Below are positions 2,489-56,575 of a stretch of 64,000 nucleotides of DNA, piece after piece. The DNA comes from Vitrella brassicaformis CCMP3155 (taxonomy: Eukaryota; Protista; Chromerida). The notes below the pieces were generated by a model. It did no database searches, was not told the origin of the DNA, and worked only from the letters and a program-made list of their open reading frames with translations. The stretch lies in assembly GCA_001179505.1 (NCBI GenBank), contig CDMY01000336.1:186001-250000 (forward strand), in the 5' to 3' direction. Positions within the stretch are counted from its first letter, which is position 1, and every line of letters begins with the position of its first letter. Made by a program: the position numbers and the translations under genes.

Positions 2489-3281
2489 TTCCGGGGCCGA
2501 TTCAGTGCGGATGGTCTCATCTGCCCCCTCTTCTCGCGGACGATGCACCACACGGCCGCCGCCCGGCTCAGTCCTGCACACACACACACACACACCGCTT
2601 TGCTCGGCGCTGCAGTCATCTCAACTCCTCCTCAAGGAGATTGCGCGGACCTTGTTTCCCGCATTTCCATGGGTTGGCCGCTAACCGTCTGCTGCTCGTG
2701 CTGAGCCGCGTCCCGCACACGAATGTTCATCGCATCGGCTGCACACAACACACAAAGCACAGAGCGCATCAAAAGTCGTGGTTTCCGCGCTGGATGAGCA
2801 TGGTTTTCGGTCCATGCGGTGTGCTGACCAACTTCCGTCGCGAACCGCAGCCAGCTGCTGCTCTGAAACATCCCTACTCACTCACTCAGGCCGGCCTGCA
2901 CGCCCGCCGTGCTGTCGCGATCTTGAGACGCCTCTCAAGCCGCCGCTCTTGTCCCAATCGCTTGCTCGTTGACGCCTACAACCTCCCATTCATAACGAGC
3001 TCTCTCTCAACAGCGATCCATCTCTGCGAGCTTGGCTTTAGGCCGCCTCCTCTTTTCCTTCTCTCTCCCTCCTGAATGAAATGGATGACAGAGCCGTCTG
3101 CGTGCGGGGAGCGGTATGGTGCTGAGTGAGTTGAGGGCTGGTGTTTTTGACTGACTCATGCCGTCGCAGGCGCTCCCTTTGAGTAAGTGAGGTGAGGGTG
3201 GCTGAGGCGTGCAGAGGAGCGGCAGCGGACCGGGAGAAACCGAGTTTTTGGAGGGGCAGGGGAGCAACAGAGAGAGTCGCG

Positions 3282-6200
3282 ATGGGGACGGAGAGTGTGT
3301 GTTTCAGCGAGGTGGACGTAGATGACTTCATCGGCAAGCCTCAGGTGCGCCCGCACAAGACGCACAAACACTCACACACACGGGGTGGGACGGTCGCACC
3401 CTGCGCAGTGACTCACTCATTCCTGCCTGCTGGTGTGTTGCTTGTGTGTGCGTGTGTCAGTCTGGCAGAGGGAAGCGGCCAATGGAGATCTTCGAGCTTG
3501 TTGCAGAAGATCGTAAGCTCAAGTCGACACACCAAACCGACGCCCACACAGCGGCCGGCCCGTGACCACGGTGTGTCTCTGTCTCTGTCCTGTGTGCGCC
3601 TCAGGGCTGAATGAGGACGATGTGCAGGGTCTGATAGAGCAGACGGCATCGGGAGGGAAGCGGTCAGCGTGTGTTGTGTTGTCGAGCGGCGACTGGTTCC
3701 ACGTCAACTCCACACTCGAGACGCAGAAATCGCACCCGCTATTCGCCACACTCACTGCTTCGGTCAGCCAACCACACGCATGCAGACAGACAGACAGACA
3801 GACTTTGTTGCCTTCCCCCCGTGTGTCACGCAGCTATTCTTTGACGCCATAAGTGATGAGGACGACGGCACCATCCGGCTGCCAGACGGCTTGCGCAAGC
3901 TCCGCCTGCTCGTCAGCCCGCAGTCCTTCGCTGACCCGCCAGCGATGCCGGCACGCGGCTCGCCCCTCTACCAGGAGCTGCTGCGTCTGTGCTTCCGCTT
4001 CTACGGTGCGGAGAAGGGCCCGGTGGCCAGCCCCTCGACATGTGCCTCGGGCGGTCAGGGCGGCGGCGGACGTGCGACGCCCCTGGTACTGGAGAAGGTG
4101 CGGCTGCTCAACCGGGTCAACATCGTGTTCCATCGCCTGCAGGTGGCGACGCACTCAAGAGCATATCCATTTTGTGCGTGTGTGTCTTGTGGATGGATGG
4201 ATGGATGGATGTGTGTGTGGCGCGCAGGCTCTTGGTGTGACGTCACGGAACGACTTCTACAACTTGGCTGAGTACCTGTTGAAGCGCCACGAGGAGGAGA
4301 GCTCATTCGACCTCGACGGCTTTGCAGAGATCGTGGCCGACGTCATGCCCGACCTGCTCACCGCATTCGGCCTCTTCACCTGCATCGCTGGACAGGTGGG
4401 CAGACAGACCCGCACACACGTCGACACACACGAACCAGTGGATGGTGATGTGTTGTGGTTCAGATGAAGTGTCTTGACGCGATATCGTCGCTCAAGACCA
4501 GCTGTCACATCCAACCCAAACCAGGTAGGTTAGGTGATTGACACGCGCAATGAGCAATGGGCAATCAACACACACCACATACATAACTGTCCATCCCCTC
4601 TCTCTGCCTCTCTGTCTTTCTCTCTCTCAGAGCCCATAGTGTCCGACATGTCGACGGCGCCCCCAGCAACGGAGGCGGACAACCAGTTCAGCAACTCTGA
4701 CCTGGGCGACTACCAGTCACCCTCACCGCCCAACCACATTGACAACGACCCGCCCTTCTCAAACCCTCAGGACACGTTCGGCGCGCCAGACAACTCCCGC
4801 AACGACCACACATCCTTCAACACGTCGTGCATCCCGCCACCGGGCAGCCCCCACCTCTCCCCGCCGCTGTTTGACCTCAACGCGTCTTGTTCCCACAACG
4901 AGGAGGCCTGCGACTGGGGCAATGGGGGCGGTATGTGGGGGTCGCAGACACAGGAGGGGCTGCTGCGGCGGGACAAGCGGCACTACAGCCTGCCGTGGGG
5001 GTCGCAGATCGGCGTCAAGCGGCCGCACGACGGTGGCAGCATGATCGACGACGACGGGCCGCCCACCAAGGCCACCAAGCTGCAGTCCATCATGGAGGAC
5101 CAGGAGGTGGCATTCGGACCGCCCGGCTACGGCCATGGGGACACCACACAGCCGCCGTCGCTCGACTCGCCGCCATTTGGGTACACGGGCCGCGGCGGCG
5201 GGCACGGCGAGGGCGCCGTCAACCTGGAGACCGACAGCGGACGGAACAAGGGGCCGACACAACCCATCAGGGTGAGTGAGTGCACGATGGATGACAGACA
5301 GGGAGGAAAGTCCGCCTCACATTCGTCTGTGTCTCTGCAGAGCTCTCGTCGGCGCCACACCATCCGTGGCGGGCAGGGGCTCTCCTCTCTCGGCAGCGGC
5401 AGGTCGTCAGAGTGTCCGTCGTCGTCGCAGCCCCCCGACTGCCCCTCGTCCTTCCTCCCCCACTTGGCCACTCACACCGACGGCAACGGCAATGGCGGCA
5501 ACAGTGACGGGGACGCGTCGACGCCCACAGAGGGCGCTGGCGAGAGAGAGAGGCGGGGGGAGGGCAAGGGCGGGGAGGACGACAGGGATGGGGACTGCCT
5601 GTGCGCCACATGTGTCAGGTGAGCAGAGCTGGTTGGGGATATGGGTGGACGGATGATGGCATGATGTCTGTCATGTGGTTTGTGTGTCAGGTGGCGTCGA
5701 GCCGTCAAGTCGGAGGCTCTTGAGGTGGTGGAGCCGCTCAAGGAACAACTCGAACAGAGAAACAGCACCATAGGGTCAGTCAGTCAGTCAGTCCAGCCAG
5801 CTCATGAGAGGCCACCGCAATCCAACACCCACCAGCCAGCCAGCACGCTCCGTCTTTTTGTGTCTGTCGTGGCGGCCGTCAGGTTGCTGAAGAAAGAGGT
5901 CTCAGAGCTGCAGAGTGCCGTGTCGCGGCTGCAGAACCTCACCCAGTTGCTCCGCCTATGGACACACCCCGCATTCGCCAGCAAGGCCGACATGCTCATC
6001 GCGTCCGCTCAGCCTGAAGACACAAACACCCCCAGTGCCGCCACCAACACCAAGACCAGCAGCCAACGGGCCGACAGCCAGAACACCGTGCCCTTCGCCA
6101 CACAGAGCGCCCAGAGTGGTGGTGCTGGTGCTGGTGCTGGTGGTGCTGGTTCGGCGTTCGGTGGTGCGGGTGGTGCTCAGGGGTTTGGCGGCATGGCCAA

Positions 6201-48278: not shown

Positions 48279-49117
48279 CAGACAGTGATTTGTCTGTCGA
48301 TCAGTGTGGGGGGTGGGAAATGAGGTGGGGAGAGGCCTGCCAGCGGCGGGCGGGACGTTTTTGGTGCGTGTAATTATTGCATGGGATGAATGAGTGAGTG
48401 ATGTTTGCTTTGTGTGTAGAGGAGGGCTGGGTGGCGTGCAGTGCCTCGTATTGATGACGTTGGTTGATGGGGTGATTTGTATAGGGCGATGGATGGATGG
48501 ATGTGTCTGTGGGCGGAGTGGCCAACGAAGTGATAGGCTGACTCGTCATGGTTCAGCACTACTCGACAACGTGACTGACACCATCATCAATCAATCGCGT
48601 CATCGAGACAGGCGAGAAGGGGAGTGGCATGACACCAACTCAGATACCACACACGCGCACACACACACACACACACACACAGCAGACACCGGTAGGCAGG
48701 CATTCAGGAGGGCATCCACGATCCATCCATGAAGTTGCAGGCATACCGAGGCCAAAATGAGTTATCTATAGCAGTGGACAAATACGAACAAGGGCAGCTC
48801 ATCCATCAGACTAACGCGCCAAACAAACGAACAAAGGCCTCTGCCTACAGATCAGGAGAGTCAGTGAGAAGAGCTTGCACACACAGCACACAACTAACTA
48901 TATGAAAACTAATACCAACACAAATGCAAATACTATATCGCCCGCTCAGAGAGAGAGAGAGAGAGAGAGGCGCCACCACGCACAGCAGCACGCGCGCACA
49001 GCAACCGACAATCGACAGGCAGGTAAAGGTGTGGTATGGATGGGTTAAATAGGCTGTGAAAAACACGCCACACGCACTGCACCGCACTGCACACGCCTCA
49101 CTCACTCACTCGACTGA

Positions 49118-50854
49118 CTATGTCGGCAGTGTGCTGTCGGGCAGGAAGCACTGTTCTTTCTTCTCGTCGTAGCAGCACCCCCGCTTCCGGCACTGGTCGC
49201 CGCCCAGCCCCCTCCCGCACGCCAGCCGCCTTTTGCCAACGACACTGCACGTGTCCCCAGCGTGGAAGCACAAGGGCTGCCCCTGAGGGCCCTGCGGGTC
49301 CCAGCAGCAGCCACGCGCCTGAAGACAGACAGAACACACACGGACAGAGAGAGGAGAGGAGGAGTGCAACGGGCGTGTGGGGCCGCGCTTCCTTCCTCAC
49401 CTCGCAGGCCTGCTTGTTGGTGCCGGGCGTCCCACAGGCGGCCCTGGTCTCCTTGCCCCACGCTGCACACACATTCCCCTGCTGCTGCCCGTCCTTGCCT
49501 GATGCCCCACCATGAAGTGGCCTGAAGCACCAGGGCTGTCCCTCCCTCTTCCCCCCGGCAATGCCAGGCGGCCGATAACAACACCCCCGCTGCTCGCACT
49601 GTTCCTGTGTGATGAACCCCTGCCCCTCCGTGCAGTCGTGTCTCTCCTTTTCTGCCGCCACGCACATGGCGCCCCTGGACACGCACCATGGCGAGTCGAC
49701 GACGTTGGACCGGCCGATGGATGTGCCGCCCTTGTCGAGTGCGACGGCCTTGTAGCGGACACAGCTGTTGACGGGCGAGTGGGTGTTGTGGTGGGGCAGG
49801 GTGACGATGGTCTCAAAGTGCTCGCGGGGGACGGATGTGACGAGCTGAAGCGGGCTGCCCAGCTGGCCGGCCTTGACCTTCCATGTGGCCACCTCTGTCG
49901 CGCCATTCCTGTGCACAGGAGGGAGGGAGGGAGACACAGATGCCATTCATCAATGGGATGTATCAGTGTCTGCTGACGCGGCCCACCAGCTGAAGTGCAG
50001 TCTCGGTGGGTCGGTGTCTGCGTTGAGGACTAGTGTGGGTTTGCCCTCCCCCCTGCTGGCCCAGGGGCTCTTGAGTGCCCTGTAGGCCATGCCGTTGGCG
50101 AACCGGAACTCCAGCAGCTTGCTGCCGTCACGGCTCACCTCGGTGTAGAAGGGCTCGCTCTGCGGCTCCACACCCGCCCAACTGATCACCTTGTTGCCGT
50201 TGCTCAACGTCTGTGGTATACATATACCAGACAGCGCATGTGGTGATGAAGGTGTCGGAGCTAGAGTGCCCTCTCACCTGCACAGACCCCATTGCGTAGC
50301 CGTAACGAGGCTGCAGCATTAAACCAAAGAAGAGCCGTCCTCTGCTTTAAGCGTGCCATGGTTGGCTCAGGTCAGCTCAGCTCACACACCGACCGGGTCG
50401 TGTTTATACTCCCACACGAGTTTGGCCTTCATGCTCTTCTCGTCGAGGTGGAACTCCAGTGCCCGCGACTCCTCCGGCGGGTGCTCGTTGTGGTTATCGT
50501 ACACCGTCAACACACCGGGCTCTGTCATACGGGCGGAGTGCTGCCTGTAATGAAGGCAACACACACACCCACACACAGACAGAGAGACACACACACACGC
50601 ACAGGTGGGGTGGCTGAGCTGCGTGGGTGACGTGAGGTGACGTACCAGTAGAAGGGGTTGTCAAGGTCGAATGAGTTGGACGTCTCTTTGGTGCCGCCGA
50701 ACCGCCAGATGACTTTGCCTGTCTTGCGGTCGACTTTGATCACCTGCGACAGGTGACGAAACGACACCAAAATGTGACCGTCGGGCGTCCAATCCTGAAT
50801 GCACACACACACACACACACAAACACGCCCGCAGACATGAATCTCCCTCATCCG

Positions 50855-50888
<34 letters not shown>

Positions 50889-52787
50889 TGTGTGTGTTTG
50901 GCTGACCACAGAGTTGGCGTGGAGGTGGTCGACGGACTCCTGGCCCCTGTCGAATTTCTGCTCGGTGATCTTGAACTGGTCGTAGAGGTGGTCCCAAGAG
51001 GACCACTGAAACACCGTCCGTCCGTTGGGTTCTAGCTCCTGGATGATGACGCCCAGCGCCTGGCCAGCGGGGCTGCCCCCGAATGCCGCCATGTTCTTGT
51101 GCCGCTTGTCGTTGGCAAGGATCAGACGGTGACCCTTCTTGTCGATCTGGATGCCGTGACCATTCGACGCATAACCTGGGTGGGTCAACAAATGCATGCC
51201 ACACGCACACACGGTGGGTGCGTGTGGAAGCGTCTCATTGCATTCATTGTGTCGGCCGTCCCGCTCCGCTCACCGACCGTACGTACCGTATTTGGGTGTG
51301 ATGAAGTCGACCTCCTTGTACCTCGAGTTGAGCACCACCCACCCATTCCTCGCCCGGTCGTGGTACGTCACCTGTCCGTTGTCGTGCAGCTTGAGGTCCC
51401 TCACGCTCCAGCCGTGCCACCCCTGGTTGGAGTAGTCGAAACGGTGCCACCACACGGCGTCGCCGCTCTGTCCGTCGAGGATGAGGAGGAAGTCGTGGGA
51501 AACGTGCTCCGGGTGCCGTATGTGGGCCGTGAAAATGTGGCCGGCCGCCGTGCCGGGCTGACGGGGCTGCGTCACTATCACCTAGGGAGAGGGAAGACAG
51601 ATAGCATGCAGGGGGAGGGCTGGTTGTTCTGGGGGTGTGGTGTGGTGTGGGTGTACCTGTGGGTGGTCTGGTGGCAGCGTGAGGTACTCTGATAGCGGCA
51701 GCCGAGCCTCGCCCTTCCCCGTCTTGTTGTCCCCCTTTCCATCGGTCTCGGCCTCGGCCCATGCGCCCATGGCCGCCTCCCACTCATCCCATGGATCGTA
51801 CACAGGGTACGTTTCAGTGTCAGCAGCGTCGGCAGCCTTTGGAGTCTCCTCTGCTTCCGCGTCAAGATCGCTCTCCTGTTCCTCTTCCTCCAGTCCTTTC
51901 TCGTGGTCCCTTTCTTCTTTCTGTGCTGCCTCCTCCGTTGGCGTGCTCTCATCATGCCATGTGTCGTGGCCGTCGTCCTCCTGCGGCTGACCGGTCATTG
52001 TGGTGTCGTTGAATTCCCCTATTGTCGGCTCATAATCATAACCCACATCTGTGTCGGGCTGTGGCTCCTCTGCTGCTGTGTCGGTCTCTTCTATCGGGTA
52101 GTCATCATCCTCGCCGTCATCGCCCTCATCGCCCTCATCCTCATCCGTATAGTTGGCGACACTTCTCCACTCTCCTCCTCCTCCCTCCTCCCGCTGATTC
52201 TTTAGAAGGATGTCGAAGACGGTCTCCCACAGGCTGTTGAGGGGGGCGCTGTGCCGTGAGGAGGAGCTGTCATTCTGGGCGAGCCGCTGCGGCAGCGATA
52301 CGTCGGCGCCGTCCTCGCTCAGCGCCTGACCAAATATCGTCTCGTTGATGCGGAACGTTTCCTTGCTCGCATCGAACATGTCCCCACTGGCCGTCTTGAA
52401 GCTCCACTGGAACGATTGCCCGTTGTCCGTTTGCCTGGCGGTCACGGTCACTATCTCGTTAGTGTCGAAGGGCTCGTCGGGGGTGAAGATGAGGGTCTCG
52501 CCGTCGTCGCTTTGGTCAAGCGTCCCTTCCTTGAAGCCGCTCCGGGCGCCCTCTGCCGTGATGTCCACATCCCTTTTGCCAAGCCCGCTGTCCTTTGCCC
52601 GCAGGAGGATGTTGGTCAGCGGCGACGCGCCCTTGCTGCCGGCGAGGGGGAACACATACGCCGCGAAGCCCTGTGAGGCGCTTGATGGCGGCTTCTTGTC
52701 GGGTCGCAGGTGAAGTTCTTTCTTCTTTCCTGCGAGAGCCGTCGCTAGAAGCCCCAGGATTAAGGTCAGGTGGCCCCATAGCCACAT
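49118..52787 (-). CDS. Secreted arylsulfate sulfotransferase (ASST)-family protein: signal peptide, Ig-like domain, acidic linker, ASST propeller, three C-terminal trefoil (P-type) domains
   Basis: Signal MWLWGHLTLILGLLATALAG; Ig-like AYVFPLAGS...DDGETLIFTPDEPF...VTV; ASST motifs NGHGI, DHLHANSV, VSFRHLSQVIKVDRKTGKVIWRFGG, W|QHSAR, YDN, GSVQ|TLSNGNKVISW and YRA; three six-Cys repeats C-x9-10-C-x8-11-C-x4-CC-x6-15-CF. Confidence 0.88.
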
Positions 52788-52981
52788 GTTTGGAACCCCC
52801 CTTTACTGCTGCCTCGTGCACGGGACCCTCTCCCACCTGTTCATCTCCCGTCCCATTATTTCAGCCGCCGTTGCGCTGGGGGCGTCTCCAGGCCCCCGTC
52901 CTTCCCCTTCAGGCTCACTTGTGATCTACCTTCCGCCGTGACGTCCTAGGAGACGTCTTTCGTCGGAGATACTTACTGGCA
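52788..52981. promoter_or_regulatory. Short divergent promoter region
   Basis: 194 bp between head-to-head ATGs at 52787 (-) and 52982 (+). Confidence 0.4.
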
Positions 52982-55341
52982 ATGATCACGCGGAGGCCAC
53001 CGCAGCAGGGTAGACCTGTCCTGGCGGTGGTTGTGAGGGCGGCGGAGCTCTTTACCAAAGCTGTCGCCTTCGCCGCGTGGCTGGGCTGGTACCAATACTT
53101 GAAGGCCAAGCTCCGGAGGGACTTTGACGAATGCGACAAGGGGTGCACGGCCACCTATGTCGCTGCTGCTGTGGCCACAGTGCTGAGTGTGCTCGTGGTC
53201 TATTCCCTTGTATACGCCCACAAGGCAATGCCATGGACATACCACAGACGCCTCCATTGATTGAGATTTCAGTGTGCTGCACTGATGTGTTCTGCTTCGA
53301 TCGTCAGGTGCTTCTCGAGGCGCTCCAGCGGCGGACGAGAGACTCTGAGGTCCGGACGGTGAGTCCGTCCGACAAGTCGCCGCTGCTGACAGTGCGGGTG
53401 TTCTCAAAGACCGTTGACCTGATATCTGACACCCTGCCCTTCCTCTTTGTCGAATTCTGGTCGGGCACGAGAAGAAAGAAATGATGCGATGGATAAATTG
53501 CATGTATTGCATGTATTGCATGTCCCCTTGTTGGTTGGGTTGGTTCTAGGTACGACGTCATAAACGACAACAGACCCGACTACGATCACCAAACAGACGA
53601 CAATCAACTCTACTGGGCATGGTAATTCGAGCTGCTTTCGGCATCCACGAGCGAAGATATGAAAACCTCAGCCTCTCTGTCTGCGTATCTGGGGGCTTTG
53701 CAGGCATTGGATTTTCTTCATCGTTTTCAGCGCTGTGGCGGCCTTCACTCTCGGCATCCTCGGCACACTCACGCCAAACGAGCCCACCATTAAACAGGCC
53801 GCCTTCAAGAAGGCGGGCAAGTCCGTCACGGCGGCGTTTGCGTGGTTCTGTGCTATGGCCCTTTACGCGGCCTTCTTGTCCCTGCTGGAGAAGGTGCATA
53901 CGGAGGGCGATGGAGACTTGAAGCTATCAGAGTAGGTGATCAGCGTGTGTTGACGTACGTATCTGTCTTTGTTTCTTTGCATCCGTTGATCCTTGTTTTG
54001 CCGCGTCCCTCCCTCCCTCCCTTGCAGACTCAACTGGATTGTGTTTGCTGCTGGGACGGCTCTGGCTCTCTCCTTGTTGGCCCCCGCCCCATCTGAGAAG
54101 AGGATAGATATCCTGCAGCATCCAGAGAACGAGGGGGAAGCCGAGACGTCCGAGGCGGCAGAGCAGTCCGTCATAGAAGCTATCGGAGGTGAGACAGTGA
54201 CCCCAGGGACCCCCCCCCCCCCCCCCCCNNNNNNNNNNNNNNNNNNNNNNNNNNNNNNNNNNNNNNNNNNNNNNNNNNNNNNNNNNNNNNNNNNNNNNNN
54301 NNNNNNNNNNNNNNNNNNNNNNNNNNNNNNNNNNNNNNNNNNNNNNNNNNNNNNNNNNNNNNNNNNNNNNNNNNNNNNNNNNNNNNNNNNNNNNNNNNNN
54401 NNNNNNNNNNNNNNNNNNNNNNNNNNNNNNNNNNNNNNNNNNNNNNNNNNNNNNNNNNNNNNNNNNNNNNNNNNNNNNNNNNNNNNNNNNNNNNNNNNNN
54501 NNNNNNNNNNNNNNNNNNNNNNNNNNNNCCCCCCCCCCCCTCCCCATGTGTCTCCGTCCGTGTCTGTCTCCTTAATTGCAAGGCTTCGTCATGAGTGCTG
54601 GGCGGGACGTCCTGGGTCTGCATTTCCAGCTCGTCGCCAAGGCGGCCGTCTACACCGCGGCCCTTGCATTCTCATCTGCAGTCACCCTCTCCATCTTCGA
54701 AGGCAGCGACTATGGCGGCCTTGACGACATTCGACGGAAGCTCATCGTCCGGGCAGTGCTGTCGACCATCTTCGGGGCTATCTTTATCGTTCTCCTGCAG
54801 TTCATTCTGGGCACCACAAAGAGACCCCCGCAAGCTGCTGCTGCTGGAGGGGTCACTGTTGACACGGAGGGGGCGGTGGCTGAGGTGCAGCGTATCAGAA
54901 GGGCAATCCTGGGGGAAATCCTGACCATCATAACGACGGGAATCGGCTTTATTACTGGCGACGTACGTGAGCAAGAGACAGACCGCCTTGGTCACTCTGT
55001 GTTTTTGACGACCCTGTGTCGTTCAGGCTTGGGTGGAGGCCTTTCGGTTTCGCAAGGAGATGGAGGATGAAGACGAGTGGCTGGTGTTTGCCGTTGTTAT
55101 GACTATTGCGGCTGTTGTTTCGGAGTTTCTGTGGGCGCAATATGTGCTGGGGGCGGTGCAGGGGCTCTTTCGTGAGATGCGGTCGAGGTGGGACGGCTAT
55201 GCTCATGGCCGAAGGGAACAGACAGAAATGGCCGAGACGGCGCCTCAAGTGATTGGAAGCGGCGACGATGTGAAGCCGCCATCCTATGGCGACGACCCCA
55301 ACCAGCCGCCCACGTACACATCGGACCCTGTGCTGCTCTGA
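52982..55341 (+). CDS. Multi-pass membrane protein of unknown family (about 8-10 TM)
   Basis: In-frame spliced exons with hydrophobic segments (TYVAAAVATVLSVLVVYSL; WIFFIVFSAVAAFTLGILG; FAWFCAMALYAAFLSLL; WIVFAAGTALALSLL; VLSTIFGAIFIVLLQFILG; WLVFAVVMTIAAVVSEFLW). The N gap lies in an intron. Confidence 0.7.
54229..54528. other. Assembly gap (300 N) flanked by poly-C tracts
   Basis: N run directly visible, with C-runs of about 19 and 12 nt on the two sides. Confidence 0.98.
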
Positions 55342-56072
55342 CTGAGCACTTGCCTATTTGACTTACGTGACACATGTGTTTATATCTATTTGTCTGTCTG
55401 TCTGTTTGTTCGTGTGTGTGTCTATGGGTGGGTGTGGTGTTGACGGCAAAGAAGATCATTGACTCGATGACTGACTTGACTGACTTGTGTCTCATCCATC
55501 CATCCATCAGATCACATCACAGTGAGTGAGAACCTTCATGACATCGCTGCCGGCAGCTGCTGTACAAGAATGAAATGAACGGATGAATGAAGATGGCTCG
55601 CTCATGGCTCGCCAGTGGCTGGCCGTAGAGAGAGAGAGATAGAGAGATAGACGGACGGTGGTCTTGCTGACTGACTGACTGACTGACAGACGCAGATGGG
55701 GACAATGGCCATATGTATCGATGCCCAGCTACGTCCGTGTGGCTGGTAAGCCGTGTCTGGCACACACACGGACGTACCTGTGCATCGATCGATATGGCCA
55801 TCCGTTGTCCCCATCTGACTGACTGACTGACTTGCTCGCTCGCCCACTCACCCCCACACGATGGTACGTACCAATCACTCACTCATTATGGACAGACTAT
55901 ACACACAGCACTATCAGGGAGGGAACACAACACACCCCACACACTCTGATGAATGAATGAATGATACATACGCAGACAACTGACAAAACCGACTAACATC
56001 AATCCGCCTTCCCTCTGGCTGGCTGGCTGCCCGCCCAGCCACCCACAAATCCTTGCCCCACTTTTCTCTCCC

Positions 56073-56372
56073 NNNNNNNNNNNNNNNNNNNNNNNNNNNN
56101 NNNNNNNNNNNNNNNNNNNNNNNNNNNNNNNNNNNNNNNNNNNNNNNNNNNNNNNNNNNNNNNNNNNNNNNNNNNNNNNNNNNNNNNNNNNNNNNNNNNN
56201 NNNNNNNNNNNNNNNNNNNNNNNNNNNNNNNNNNNNNNNNNNNNNNNNNNNNNNNNNNNNNNNNNNNNNNNNNNNNNNNNNNNNNNNNNNNNNNNNNNNN
56301 NNNNNNNNNNNNNNNNNNNNNNNNNNNNNNNNNNNNNNNNNNNNNNNNNNNNNNNNNNNNNNNNNNNNNNNN
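56073..56372. other. Assembly gap (300 N)
   Basis: N run directly visible, followed by a C-run. Confidence 0.98.
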
Positions 56373-56575
56373 CCCCCCCTGTCTGTCTGTCTGTCTGTCG
56401 GCCAACTCAACTCCGCCCTGCAGGGGTCGCATTCACGGCGAGAATGCCTTCTCATCGAAGCTTGACCGATCCATCTGAAATGACACAAAGCACGACACAA
56501 CACAACACACCAAATGACCTCCTCACACGAAATGACCTACACACACCACTCTTCCTGTCTGTCTGTCTGTCTGCC

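What the first reader, a model, noticed from the sequence alone, without database searches (positions are those of the whole stretch)
49118..52787. Secreted bacterial-type arylsulfate sulfotransferase fused to three trefoil (P-type) domains
The ASST propeller retains equivalents of the PAPS-independent active site known from E. coli AssT: His in NGH, H-x-N in DHLHANS, Arg in SFR and the catalytic His in QH. It is preceded by a signal peptide and an Ig-like domain as in bacterial ASST-like proteins, yet it has about eight spliceosomal introns. It ends in three six-Cys trefoil repeats, a glycan/mucin-binding module type mostly known from animals. The fusion suggests an extracellular enzyme that docks on glycans and transfers sulfate to or from wall, mucus or phenolic substrates, which fits a coral-associated or thick-walled alga (inference). 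I know of no description of this architecture.
Basis: partly seen in the sequence, partly recalled or inferred. Interest (0 to 1): 0.78.

Follow-up and report, generated by a model that had tools for sequence, protein, structure and literature searches.

The report
Algal sulfotransferase with trefoil tail
A transcribed, eight-intron gene of the coral-associated alga Vitrella brassicaformis encodes a probably secreted bacterial-type (Cpz4-like, PAPS-independent) aryl-sulfotransferase with three trefoil modules at its end; I found this fusion only in Vitrella, where it recurs in several sister genes, and its chemistry is untested.

Summary
Window 52787-49118 (minus strand) is one gene of nine exons and eight GT-AG introns. 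A single spliced RNA contig covers all of it. A second, independent study confirms six of the junctions, including those joining the enzyme to the trefoil exons.

The 986-aa product equals the public protein CEM03206.1 / A0A0G4EX16, auto-named "P-type domain-containing protein". Its order is: signal-like N-terminus, Big_5 Ig-like domain, 224-aa acidic linker, six-bladed ASST propeller, beta-sandwich, three six-Cys trefoils.

- **Active site:** E. coli AssT residues His252, His356, Asn358, Arg374 and catalytic His436 align to invariant H482, H561, N563, R578 and H617.
- **Closest structure:** Streptomyces Cpz4 (TM 0.82), not AssT (TM 0.59).
- **Origin:** Vitrella copies form one clade, sister to Chloroflexota enzymes and nested among bacterial ones. 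This fits an old bacterial transfer followed by intron gain and expansion.
- **Trefoils:** only the first keeps the Asp and Trp that contact sugar in human TFFs.
- **Distribution:** no ASST-trefoil protein turned up outside Vitrella. Three public Vitrella proteins and about six loci share the architecture.

A 2015 genome paper noted the family's amplification in one sentence. This scan flagged paralogues on other DNA. Function remains inferred. I rate it a new variant of a known kind, of moderate interest.

The parts
49118..52787 (-). Whole coding region: 9 exons, 8 GT-AG introns, 986 aa, equal to CEM03206.1 / A0A0G4EX16. Exons: 52787-51657, 51581-51287, 51175-50907, 50794-50646, 50544-50394, 50310-50278, 50210-49987, 49908-49401, 49318-49118.
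52728..52787 (-). N-terminal hydrophobic signal-like peptide (residues 1-20, ...ALA|GKKK). It is the only strongly hydrophobic stretch in the protein.
   Evidence: Kyte-Doolittle maximum 2.5 at residues 9-19. No dedicated signal-peptide predictor was available.
52329..52661 (-). Big_5-type bacterial Ig-like domain (residues ~43-153).
   Evidence: The Pfam PF13205 hit is weak (E 0.072). hhalign to the N-termini of bacterial homologues gives probability 97%, E 1e-10.
51657..52328 (-). Acidic low-complexity linker (residues 154-377): 68 D+E against 13 K+R, with 4 of the protein's 5 N-x-S/T sequons (the fifth, N148, lies just upstream in the Ig-like domain). Bacterial relatives lack a linker of this length.
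   Evidence: alignment consensus
49995..51581 (-). ASST six-bladed beta-propeller (residues 378-748, exons 2-7). Active-site equivalents are H482 (51158-51156), H561 (50921-50919), N563 (50915-50913), R578 (50758-50756) and H617 (50540-50538).
49665..49994 (-). C-terminal beta-sandwich that starts at the invariant SWNGATEV motif (residues 749-832) and carries conserved Cys800 and Cys826. It is shared with Cpz4 and the bacterial relatives. It lies in the same exon (exon 8) as trefoil 1.
49527..49664 (-). Trefoil 1 (residues 833-878). It keeps Asp before Cys2 and Trp before Cys6, the TFF sugar-contact residues.
49268..49469 (-). Trefoil 2 (residues 898-937), split by intron 8 (49319-49400). Both sugar-contact positions are replaced (Ala, Leu).
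49148..49249 (-). Trefoil 3 (residues 944-977), with a shortened third loop. Both sugar-contact positions are replaced.

Best explanation
This is an expressed nuclear gene of Vitrella brassicaformis. It encodes a soluble secretory-pathway enzyme of the PAPS-independent aryl-sulfotransferase (ASST) family, Cpz4-like subfamily.

The core is a Big_5 Ig-like domain, a six-bladed propeller and a C-terminal beta-sandwich. That is the architecture of Chloroflexota and Actinomycetota enzymes. The Vitrella lineage most likely acquired it once from a bacterium, then gained introns and expanded it to dozens of loci.

In one sub-lineage, three trefoil (P-type) modules were added to the C-terminus. They probably came from the trefoil pool already present in myzozoan alveolates.

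The inferred mechanism is ping-pong sulfuryl transfer through a sulfo-histidine on H617. H482, H561, N563 and R578 would hold the sulfuryl group. The sulfate would move from a small aryl-sulfate donor to a hydroxyl of a phenolic or sugar acceptor. Trefoil 1, and perhaps trefoils 2 and 3 in a structural role, would tether the enzyme to a glycan or glycoprotein matrix such as the cell or sporangium wall.

Shown here: the gene structure, transcription and splicing, the domain identities, conservation of the catalytic residues, and the phylogenetic position. Inferred: secretion, enzymatic activity, donor, acceptor and trefoil ligand.
For: - **One transcript:** a single spliced RNA contig covers all nine exons, and a second study confirms six junctions. 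The frame is open across all exons. The reading is identical to public protein P0001.
- **Domains:** Pfam finds ASST and three trefoils above their cut-offs.
- **Active site:** a profile of 36 homologues aligns EcAST His252, His356, Asn358, Arg374 and His436 to columns invariant in the family. These are H482, H561, N563, R578 and H617 in this protein. Their roles are taken from PMC13426309.
- **Fold:** the AlphaFold model has pLDDT 88.5. It matches Cpz4 (9KF4/9KF6) at TM 0.82 and E. coli AssT at TM 0.59. phmmer to Cpz4 gives 9e-33.
- **Ig-like domain:** hhalign to bacterial N-termini gives probability 97%.
- **Bacterial relatives:** the nearest non-Vitrella relatives are bacterial at 33-39% identity, and many are Big_5+ASST.
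- **Trees:** Vitrella copies form one clade, sister to a Chloroflexota clade, inside wider bacterial diversity.
- **Recurrent fusion:** the junction of the C-terminal sandwich and trefoil 1 lies inside one exon here and in three paralogues, at C395, C729 and C272.
- **Cysteines:** all 20 lie in residues 800-977 and the count is even. There is one N-terminal hydrophobic stretch.
- **Literature:** the 2015 genome paper calls the amplified Vitrella family a predicted secreted protein.
Against: - No enzymatic, localisation or proteomic data exist for this protein.
- No signal-peptide predictor was available. A signal anchor or further sorting (vacuole, plastid periphery) is not excluded.
- EcAST Thr501 has no clear equivalent. 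It aligns near M/S in AMGSVQ.
- No extracellular aryl-sulfate donor is known in chromerids. The only chromerid wall analysis I found (Chromera, PMC9293442) does not mention sulfate, and the Vitrella wall has not been analysed.
- Trefoils 2 and 3 lack the TFF sugar-contact residues.
- The direction of transfer depends on rooting with one fungal sequence. Vitrella is sister to a bacterial clade, not nested within it.
Confidence: 0.7

Rival explanations
1. The propeller is a pseudo-enzyme or has another activity, such as binding aryl sulfates or sulfated glycans, or acting as a hydrolase. On this reading the protein is mainly a structural or adhesive wall or matrix component in which propeller and trefoils are both binding modules.
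For: The family has expanded to matches on about 35 contigs, which is typical of surface or adhesive families. An earlier scan note, not checked here, reports that an Apple-fused paralogue lost two active-site residues. No donor is known outside the cell.
Against: This copy keeps all five aligned active-site residues, and these are invariant across 36 homologues. Its closest solved relative is an active sulfotransferase.
Confidence: 0.15
2. The enzyme acts inside the endomembrane system (Golgi, alveolar sacs or a vacuole) on small phenolic or glycosidic metabolites, for example in natural-product tailoring as Cpz4 does. The trefoils would serve folding, oligomerisation or retention and would not dock the enzyme on wall glycans.
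For: Cpz4 is a biosynthetic tailoring enzyme that uses dedicated aryl-sulfate donors. Two of the three trefoils lack lectin residues. Intracellular donors are easier to imagine.
Against: The protein has no retention signal, no transmembrane segment and no hydrophobic C-terminal tail. Other scan notes, which are leads only, report trefoils on wall-active enzymes of the same genome. The genome paper predicts secretion for the family.
Confidence: 0.12
3. The ASST-trefoil join is an assembly or annotation artefact, and two neighbouring genes are read as one.
For: A contig spanning two genes does not by itself prove a single mRNA (caveat printed).
Against: Exon 8 is one open exon that holds both the ASST C-terminal sandwich and trefoil 1. 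The frame is continuous with no stop. Two independent RNA data sets show the flanking junctions. The same in-exon junction occurs in three paralogues.
Confidence: 0.02

Closest known systems
Cpz4, ASST-type sulfotransferase of caprazamycin biosynthesis, Streptomyces sp. MK730-62F2 (PDB 9KF4/9KF6)
   Same: It shares the propeller plus the C-terminal SWNGATEV beta-sandwich. phmmer gives 9e-33, Foldseek gives TM 0.82 and sequence identity is 27%. The same His/His-x-Asn/Arg/His set is present.
   Different: Cpz4 is a 472-aa bacterial enzyme without a Big_5 domain, acidic linker or trefoils. It is encoded in an antibiotic gene cluster and has a known sugar-hydroxyl acceptor.
E. coli CFT073 AssT / EcAST (PDB 3ELQ, 3ETS, 3ETT)
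   Same: It has the same fold class, and His252, His356, Asn358, Arg374 and catalytic His436 align to invariant residues here. An N-terminal beta-sandwich precedes the propeller.
   Different: It is only about 16% identical with TM 0.59, and single-sequence similarity is barely detectable (E 0.0045). The Thr501 equivalent is unclear. It is a periplasmic bacterial enzyme with no trefoils.
Big_5 + ASST proteins of Chloroflexota (Anaerolineae, Caldilineaceae, Herpetosiphon) and ASSTs of Actinomycetota (Rubrobacter, Gaiellales)
   Same: They share the Big_5 - propeller - C-terminal sandwich architecture at 33-39% identity, and a Chloroflexota clade is the sister group in the trees.
   Different: They have no introns, no long acidic linker and no trefoil. 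None of the listed homologues outside Vitrella carries PF00088.
Vitrella paralogues CEM09679.1 (P0003, contig C395) and CEM31604.1 (P0048, contig C729); also loci on C272, C534 and C791
   Same: They have the same ASST + trefoil architecture at 41-49% identity. Trefoil 1 keeps Asp and Trp in P0003 and P0002/P0048.
   Different: Linkers and intron positions differ; for example, intron 8 is absent in the C395 copy. The C534 and C791 loci rest only on same-strand adjacency.
Animal trefoil proteins: TFF1-3 and the trefoil domain of GH31 alpha-glucosidases (GAA, MGAM, SI)
   Same: They share the six-Cys P-type domain (Pfam 3.6e-26). The model's best fold matches are TFF2, the GAA trefoil, TFF3 and TFF1. 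One trefoil is 48-53% identical to vertebrate GAA. GAA is a precedent for a trefoil attached to an enzyme.
   Different: The partner enzyme differs, and the trefoils sit at the C-terminus as a triple array. Only trefoil 1 keeps the Asp/Asn and Trp that bind GlcNAc-alpha-1,4-Gal in TFFs. The nearest trefoil-only relatives by sequence are dinoflagellate proteins.

Membership tests
PAPS-independent aryl-sulfate sulfotransferase (ASST; Pfam PF05935 / PF14269) | Sequence match to the family models above the curated cut-off | tested here: met
   PF05935 scores 96.6 bits (cut-off 24.2) and PF14269 scores 93 bits (cut-off 27) on P0001.
PAPS-independent aryl-sulfate sulfotransferase (ASST; Pfam PF05935 / PF14269) | Six-bladed beta-propeller fold like solved ASSTs | tested here: met
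   The model has pLDDT 88.5. Foldseek gives Cpz4 at TM 0.82 and EcAST at TM 0.59, both with probability 1.00.
PAPS-independent aryl-sulfate sulfotransferase (ASST; Pfam PF05935 / PF14269) | Catalytic histidine that is transiently sulfated (EcAST His436) | tested here: met
   The profile alignment places His436 on the invariant WQH histidine, H617.
PAPS-independent aryl-sulfate sulfotransferase (ASST; Pfam PF05935 / PF14269) | Sulfuryl-coordinating residues His252, His356, Asn358 and Arg374 | tested here: met
   They align to invariant H482, H561, N563 and R578. Their roles are taken from PMC13426309.
PAPS-independent aryl-sulfate sulfotransferase (ASST; Pfam PF05935 / PF14269) | Equivalent of EcAST Thr501 | tested here: inconclusive
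   It aligns near Met/Ser in AMGSVQ. The alignment is uncertain by 1-2 residues.
PAPS-independent aryl-sulfate sulfotransferase (ASST; Pfam PF05935 / PF14269) | Sulfuryl transfer from aryl sulfates without PAPS | not testable with these tools
   This needs a recombinant enzyme assay.
Trefoil (P-type) domain, PF00088 | Match above the cut-off, in three separate units | tested here: met
   The score is 91.2 bits (cut-off 21) over 3 stretches.
Trefoil (P-type) domain, PF00088 | Six cysteines per unit with C..C..C-x4-CC..C spacing | tested here: met
   The units lie at residues 833-878, 898-937 and 944-977.
Trefoil (P-type) domain, PF00088 | Trefoil fold | tested here: inconclusive
   The model has pLDDT 74.7. 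The top Foldseek hits are all trefoil structures (1POS, GAA, 6V1C, 6V1D; rmsd 2-4 A over about 42 residues), but the E-values are weak (0.007-1) because the domain is so small.
Trefoil (P-type) domain, PF00088 | TFF lectin residues: Asp/Asn before Cys2 and Trp before Cys6 | tested here: inconclusive
   Both are present in trefoil 1 (HDC, PWC). Both are absent in trefoils 2 and 3. Pfam membership does not require them.
Big_5 bacterial Ig-like domain, PF13205 | Match to the family model or to the homologous domain of relatives | tested here: inconclusive
   The Pfam score of 14.3 bits is below the 23.6 cut-off. hhalign to the Big_5-bearing N-termini of bacterial relatives gives probability 97%, E 1e-10.
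Secreted protein | Cleavable N-terminal signal peptide and no membrane anchor | tested here: inconclusive
   There is a hydrophobic N-terminus with A-L-A|G and no other hydrophobic stretch. No predictor and no proteome were available.

The most novel reading that the evidence does not exclude
Vitrella may run an extracellular, PAPS-independent sulfation relay. A small aryl-sulfate carrier would be made inside the cell and exported. A large family of secreted Cpz4-like ASSTs would then pass its sulfate onto wall or matrix glycans. Each enzyme would be aimed by its own binding module (trefoil here, Apple or none in paralogues). If so, this would be a way of sulfating extracellular polysaccharides that, to my knowledge, has not been reported in a eukaryote.
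Probability: 0.1. Interest if true: 0.85.

Novelty: new variant of a known kind. Interest (0 to 1): 0.45.

Why it matters
The review read here (PMC13426309) treats PAPS-independent aryl-sulfotransferases as bacterial enzymes, valued as biocatalysts, whose natural substrates are mostly unknown. Here a eukaryote carries an expressed, intron-bearing and much-expanded set of them. Some are fused to a lectin-type module.

That offers a natural experiment on what such enzymes do outside bacteria. It also gives a clean example of bacterial gene transfer followed by eukaryotic domain shuffling. Finally, it provides a handle on the almost unstudied wall and surface chemistry of a coral-associated relative of apicomplexan parasites.

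The value is tempered in three ways. The gene model is already public, the family was mentioned in 2015, and nothing yet shows activity or a ligand.

Tried and rejected
- **Single exons against the PDB:** exon 3 alone found only a chance chitin deacetylase hit. A profile was needed.
- Exons were searched by reference. The full-length analyses used stored protein P0001, which the exhaustive search returned and which equals the exon-by-exon reading.
- **Genome scan with the 36-sequence alignment:** The search for related loci failed because no conserved stretch was found. It worked with a 9-sequence alignment.
- **NCBIfam:** no match.
- **Literature:** searches for ASST + trefoil, Vitrella + arylsulfotransferase and 9KF4 found nothing. 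Vitrella + trefoil found only an unrelated paper. The 2024 fungal aryl-sulfotransferase paper that mentions Vitrella concerns PAPS-dependent PF00685 enzymes, not this family.
- **Artefactual gene merger:** rejected (see rivals).
- **Recent animal origin of the trefoils:** I judge this unlikely. The best trefoil-only hits are dinoflagellate proteins, and intron 8 cuts through trefoil 2. It was not formally tested.
- **Poor tree row:** the Streptomyces row L118 in the second tree came from a poor ORF extraction (branch length 6.4) and should be ignored.
- **Not run:** Complex prediction, the protein atlas and VIA-align. None would have changed the verdict.
Full report
**Gene structure and transcription**

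The finding's coordinates are the exact coding span of a minus-strand gene. The ORF listing and Pfam scans of single open frames showed ASST-type pieces between 51.6 and 50.0 kb and trefoil pieces between 49.9 and 49.1 kb.

I laid four public runs on window 48700-53100. Run X4 holds one 3138-nt contig that covers 48980-52794 and skips eight segments. Run X5, from a different study and year, shows six of the same joints. These include 49907/49986, which links the end of the propeller to the exon carrying trefoil 1, and 49317/49400, which lies inside trefoil 2. Runs X1 and X2 hold only the unspliced sequence.

After the tool's stated boundary shifts, all eight introns are GT..AG and 67-112 nt long. 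The nine exons sum to 2961 nt with no stop codon, and the three split codons read G, W and W. Intron 3 (50795-50906) lies in a CA/GA repeat that the tool skipped, so I inferred it from the contig's length arithmetic and the GT/AG ends. An in-frame TAA lies six codons upstream of the ATG.

Exons were searched by reference.

**Identity of the protein and the organism**

An exhaustive phmmer search with exon 8 returned a stored 986-aa protein, P0001. Every exon peptide is found in P0001 in order, separated only by the split-codon residues.

P0001 is CEM03206.1 / UniProt A0A0G4EX16 of Vitrella brassicaformis CCMP3155. NCBI lists it as an unnamed protein product and UniProt as "P-type domain-containing protein". 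The genome has 72.7 Mb in 1064 contigs, and the window is C336:186001-250000.

**Domain architecture**

Pfam on P0001 gives PF05935 (residues 404-707, 2.1e-27), PF14269 (2.9e-26) and three Trefoil stretches (3.6e-26).

- **Ig-like domain.** The N-terminal 43-153 region aligns to the Big_5-bearing N-termini of bacterial relatives (hhalign probability 97%, E 1e-10). Pfam's own Big_5 hit is below its cut-off.
- **Acidic linker.** Residues 154-377 form an acidic linker with 68 D+E and four of the protein's five N-glycosylation sequons (the fifth, N148, lies in the Ig-like region just upstream). It has no counterpart of that length in the bacterial consensus.
- **N-terminus.** Residues 1-20 are the only strongly hydrophobic stretch and end in A-L-A|G. 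There is no C-terminal hydrophobic tail.
- **Cysteines.** All 20 lie in residues 800-977. Two are in the C-terminal sandwich, at positions also conserved in bacteria. Eighteen are in the three trefoils.

**The enzyme core**

I aligned 36 homologues (A1). The invariant columns include H482, H561, N563, R578 and H617.

The profile built from A1, searched against the PDB, aligns E. coli AssT His252, His356, Asn358, Arg374 and His436 onto exactly those columns. I checked this by counting residues in the printed alignment. A 2026 review describes these as the sulfuryl-coordinating residues and the transiently sulfated catalytic histidine (PMC13426309). Thr501 has no clear equivalent.

The closest solved structure is not AssT. 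It is Cpz4, the Streptomyces ASST of caprazamycin biosynthesis (9KF4/9KF6). phmmer gives 9e-33 over residues 457-760, including the SWNGATEVA motif. The profile gives 6e-149. The AlphaFold model of residues 378-840 (pLDDT 88.5) matches Cpz4 at TM 0.82 and AssT at TM 0.59. According to the review, Cpz4 prefers a sugar hydroxyl of a glycoside over phenolic hydroxyls.

**Relatives and origin**

Word-index searches with the ASST region list Vitrella paralogues first. Then come metagenomic and bacterial proteins at 33-39% identity. Many of these are Big_5+ASST, and some carry T9SS tails or MFS fusions. One Aspergillus protein appears at 3e-13. No other eukaryote appears among the listed hits.

The best non-Vitrella hit, P0052, sits in a dense intron-free contig and carries two ASST domains.

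A scan of one genome per prokaryotic species found at least 584 loci with the SWNGAT subfamily. The best are in Anaerolineae, Caldilineaceae and Herpetosiphon, then Rubrobacter and Gaiellales.

I built two quick maximum-likelihood trees.
- Six Vitrella proteins form one clade (SH-aLRT 98 and 85).
- That clade is sister to a Chloroflexota-dominated clade (96-98).
- The pair (support 100) is nested among Actinomycetota and Thermomicrobiota sequences when rooted on the fungal protein.

This fits a single old bacterial-to-Vitrella-lineage transfer followed by intron gain and expansion. The root rests on one distant sequence, and Vitrella is sister to a bacterial clade, not inside it. The direction of transfer is therefore likely but not proven.

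**The fusion is recurrent, and I found it only in Vitrella**

In the genome, PF05935 and PF14269 match on about 35 contigs and PF00088 on 11. On six of those contigs (C336, C395, C729, C272, C534, C791) ASST and trefoil matches lie within 1-2 kb on the same strand.

In C395, C729 and C272 the junction between the C-terminal sandwich and trefoil 1 lies within a single tblastn segment, meaning one exon, as it does here. Public proteins P0003 (988 aa) and P0048 (830 aa) have the same Pfam architecture.

The three trefoil-bearing proteins group together with weak support (80-90). This hints at one fusion event followed by duplication.

Outside Vitrella I found none.
- Of the 47 proteins that the exhaustive search of 1.84 billion representatives found with exon 8, only the three Vitrella representatives combine ASST and trefoil.
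- None of the 65 and 120 listed ASST homologues outside Vitrella carries PF00088.
- A trefoil-side search in the 542-1725 aa range found only the protein itself and vertebrate lysosomal alpha-glucosidases.

**The trefoils**

The three units have the six-Cys pattern. Trefoil 1 has a longer third loop and trefoil 3 a shorter one.

In human TFFs only two side chains touch GlcNAc-alpha-1,4-Gal. One is an Asp/Asn just before Cys2. The other is the Trp before Cys6 (PMC7221086). By cysteine register, trefoil 1 has both (HDC and PWC). Trefoils 2 and 3 have neither. Trefoil 1 of paralogues P0003 and P0002 also keeps both, read.

The trefoil model is moderate (pLDDT 74.7). Its best fold matches are all trefoil structures, but with weak E-values.

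The nearest trefoil-only sequences with a named source are from the dinoflagellates Alexandrium minutum and Crypthecodinium cohnii. The module therefore belongs to the alveolate repertoire and need not have come from animals.

**Literature and earlier notes**

I found no paper combining ASST and trefoil, or Vitrella and arylsulfotransferase.

The 2015 genome paper says in Appendix 5 that lineage-specific amplifications include a predicted secreted Vitrella protein with an "arenylsulfonase domain". I take this to mean this family. One of that paper's supplementary tables lists TREFOIL domains in five chromerid proteins. Neither describes the fusion.

The only chromerid wall analysis I found concerns Chromera. 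It does not mention sulfate and states that the Vitrella wall is unstudied.

This scan's own notes show that first readers flagged the same architecture on two other pieces of this genome (s1-226951, s1-239478; these are paralogues and were not followed up). A follow-up agent described an ASST-Apple fusion and cited the 2015 mention (s1-221646). Other notes report trefoils fused to expansin, AA12 dehydrogenase, GH13 and GH16 enzymes. I did not check those. I did see a PAN-domain frame next to a trefoil on C414.

**Verdict**

The function remains inferred: a secreted, glycan-tethered, PAPS-independent sulfotransferase. I rate it a new variant of a known kind, with moderate interest.

Noticed in passing
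G000 contigs C395:191178-192609(+), C729:2821-4277(+), C272:5802-4414(-), C534:4063-5516(+), C791:~162700-160860(-): Five further loci in the same genome carry ASST matches followed on the same strand by trefoil matches. Three of them (C395, C729, C272) have the sandwich-trefoil junction inside one exon. The C534 and C791 loci rest on adjacency only.
   Followed up: partly
L031 (G000:C395:186500-194500) 5571-6113: The C395 paralogue lacks the intron that splits trefoil 2 in this gene. P0003 residues 807-988 align to one continuous stretch. Intron positions therefore changed after duplication.
   Followed up: partly
L036 (G000:C414:56500-64500) 3853-4584(-) and ~3933-4037(-): A PAN/Apple-domain open frame (PAN_4 at 7e-10) lies directly beside the genome's best trefoil match. 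This is probably another secreted multi-module protein.
   Followed up: partly
L038 (G000:C249:52000-60000) 3453-5132(-) and 2850-3305(-): Trefoil repeats sit in a 560-aa open frame and a neighbouring frame with no other Pfam domain. They are 30 kb from an ASST gene (P0129, Big_5+ASST, no trefoil) on the same contig.
   Followed up: partly
L039 (ENA metagenome contig k141_259408) 6001-10362: The best non-Vitrella homologue is a 1453-aa bacterial-type protein with Big_5 and two tandem ASST domains. It is flanked by two aminotransferase genes and a TauE sulfite-exporter-family gene.
   Followed up: no
window ~54000-54500 and ~56000-56500: Runs of N (assembly gaps) appear as X-runs in ORF translations and as G+C dips to 0.29 and 0.24.
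   Followed up: no
window 50795-50906, 50545-50645, 48938-48979: Introns 3 and 4 and the 3' flank carry CA/TG and GA microsatellites. The reads tool skipped these stretches, and the RNA contig breaks at the 3' one, so the true 3' UTR end is not defined.
   Followed up: no
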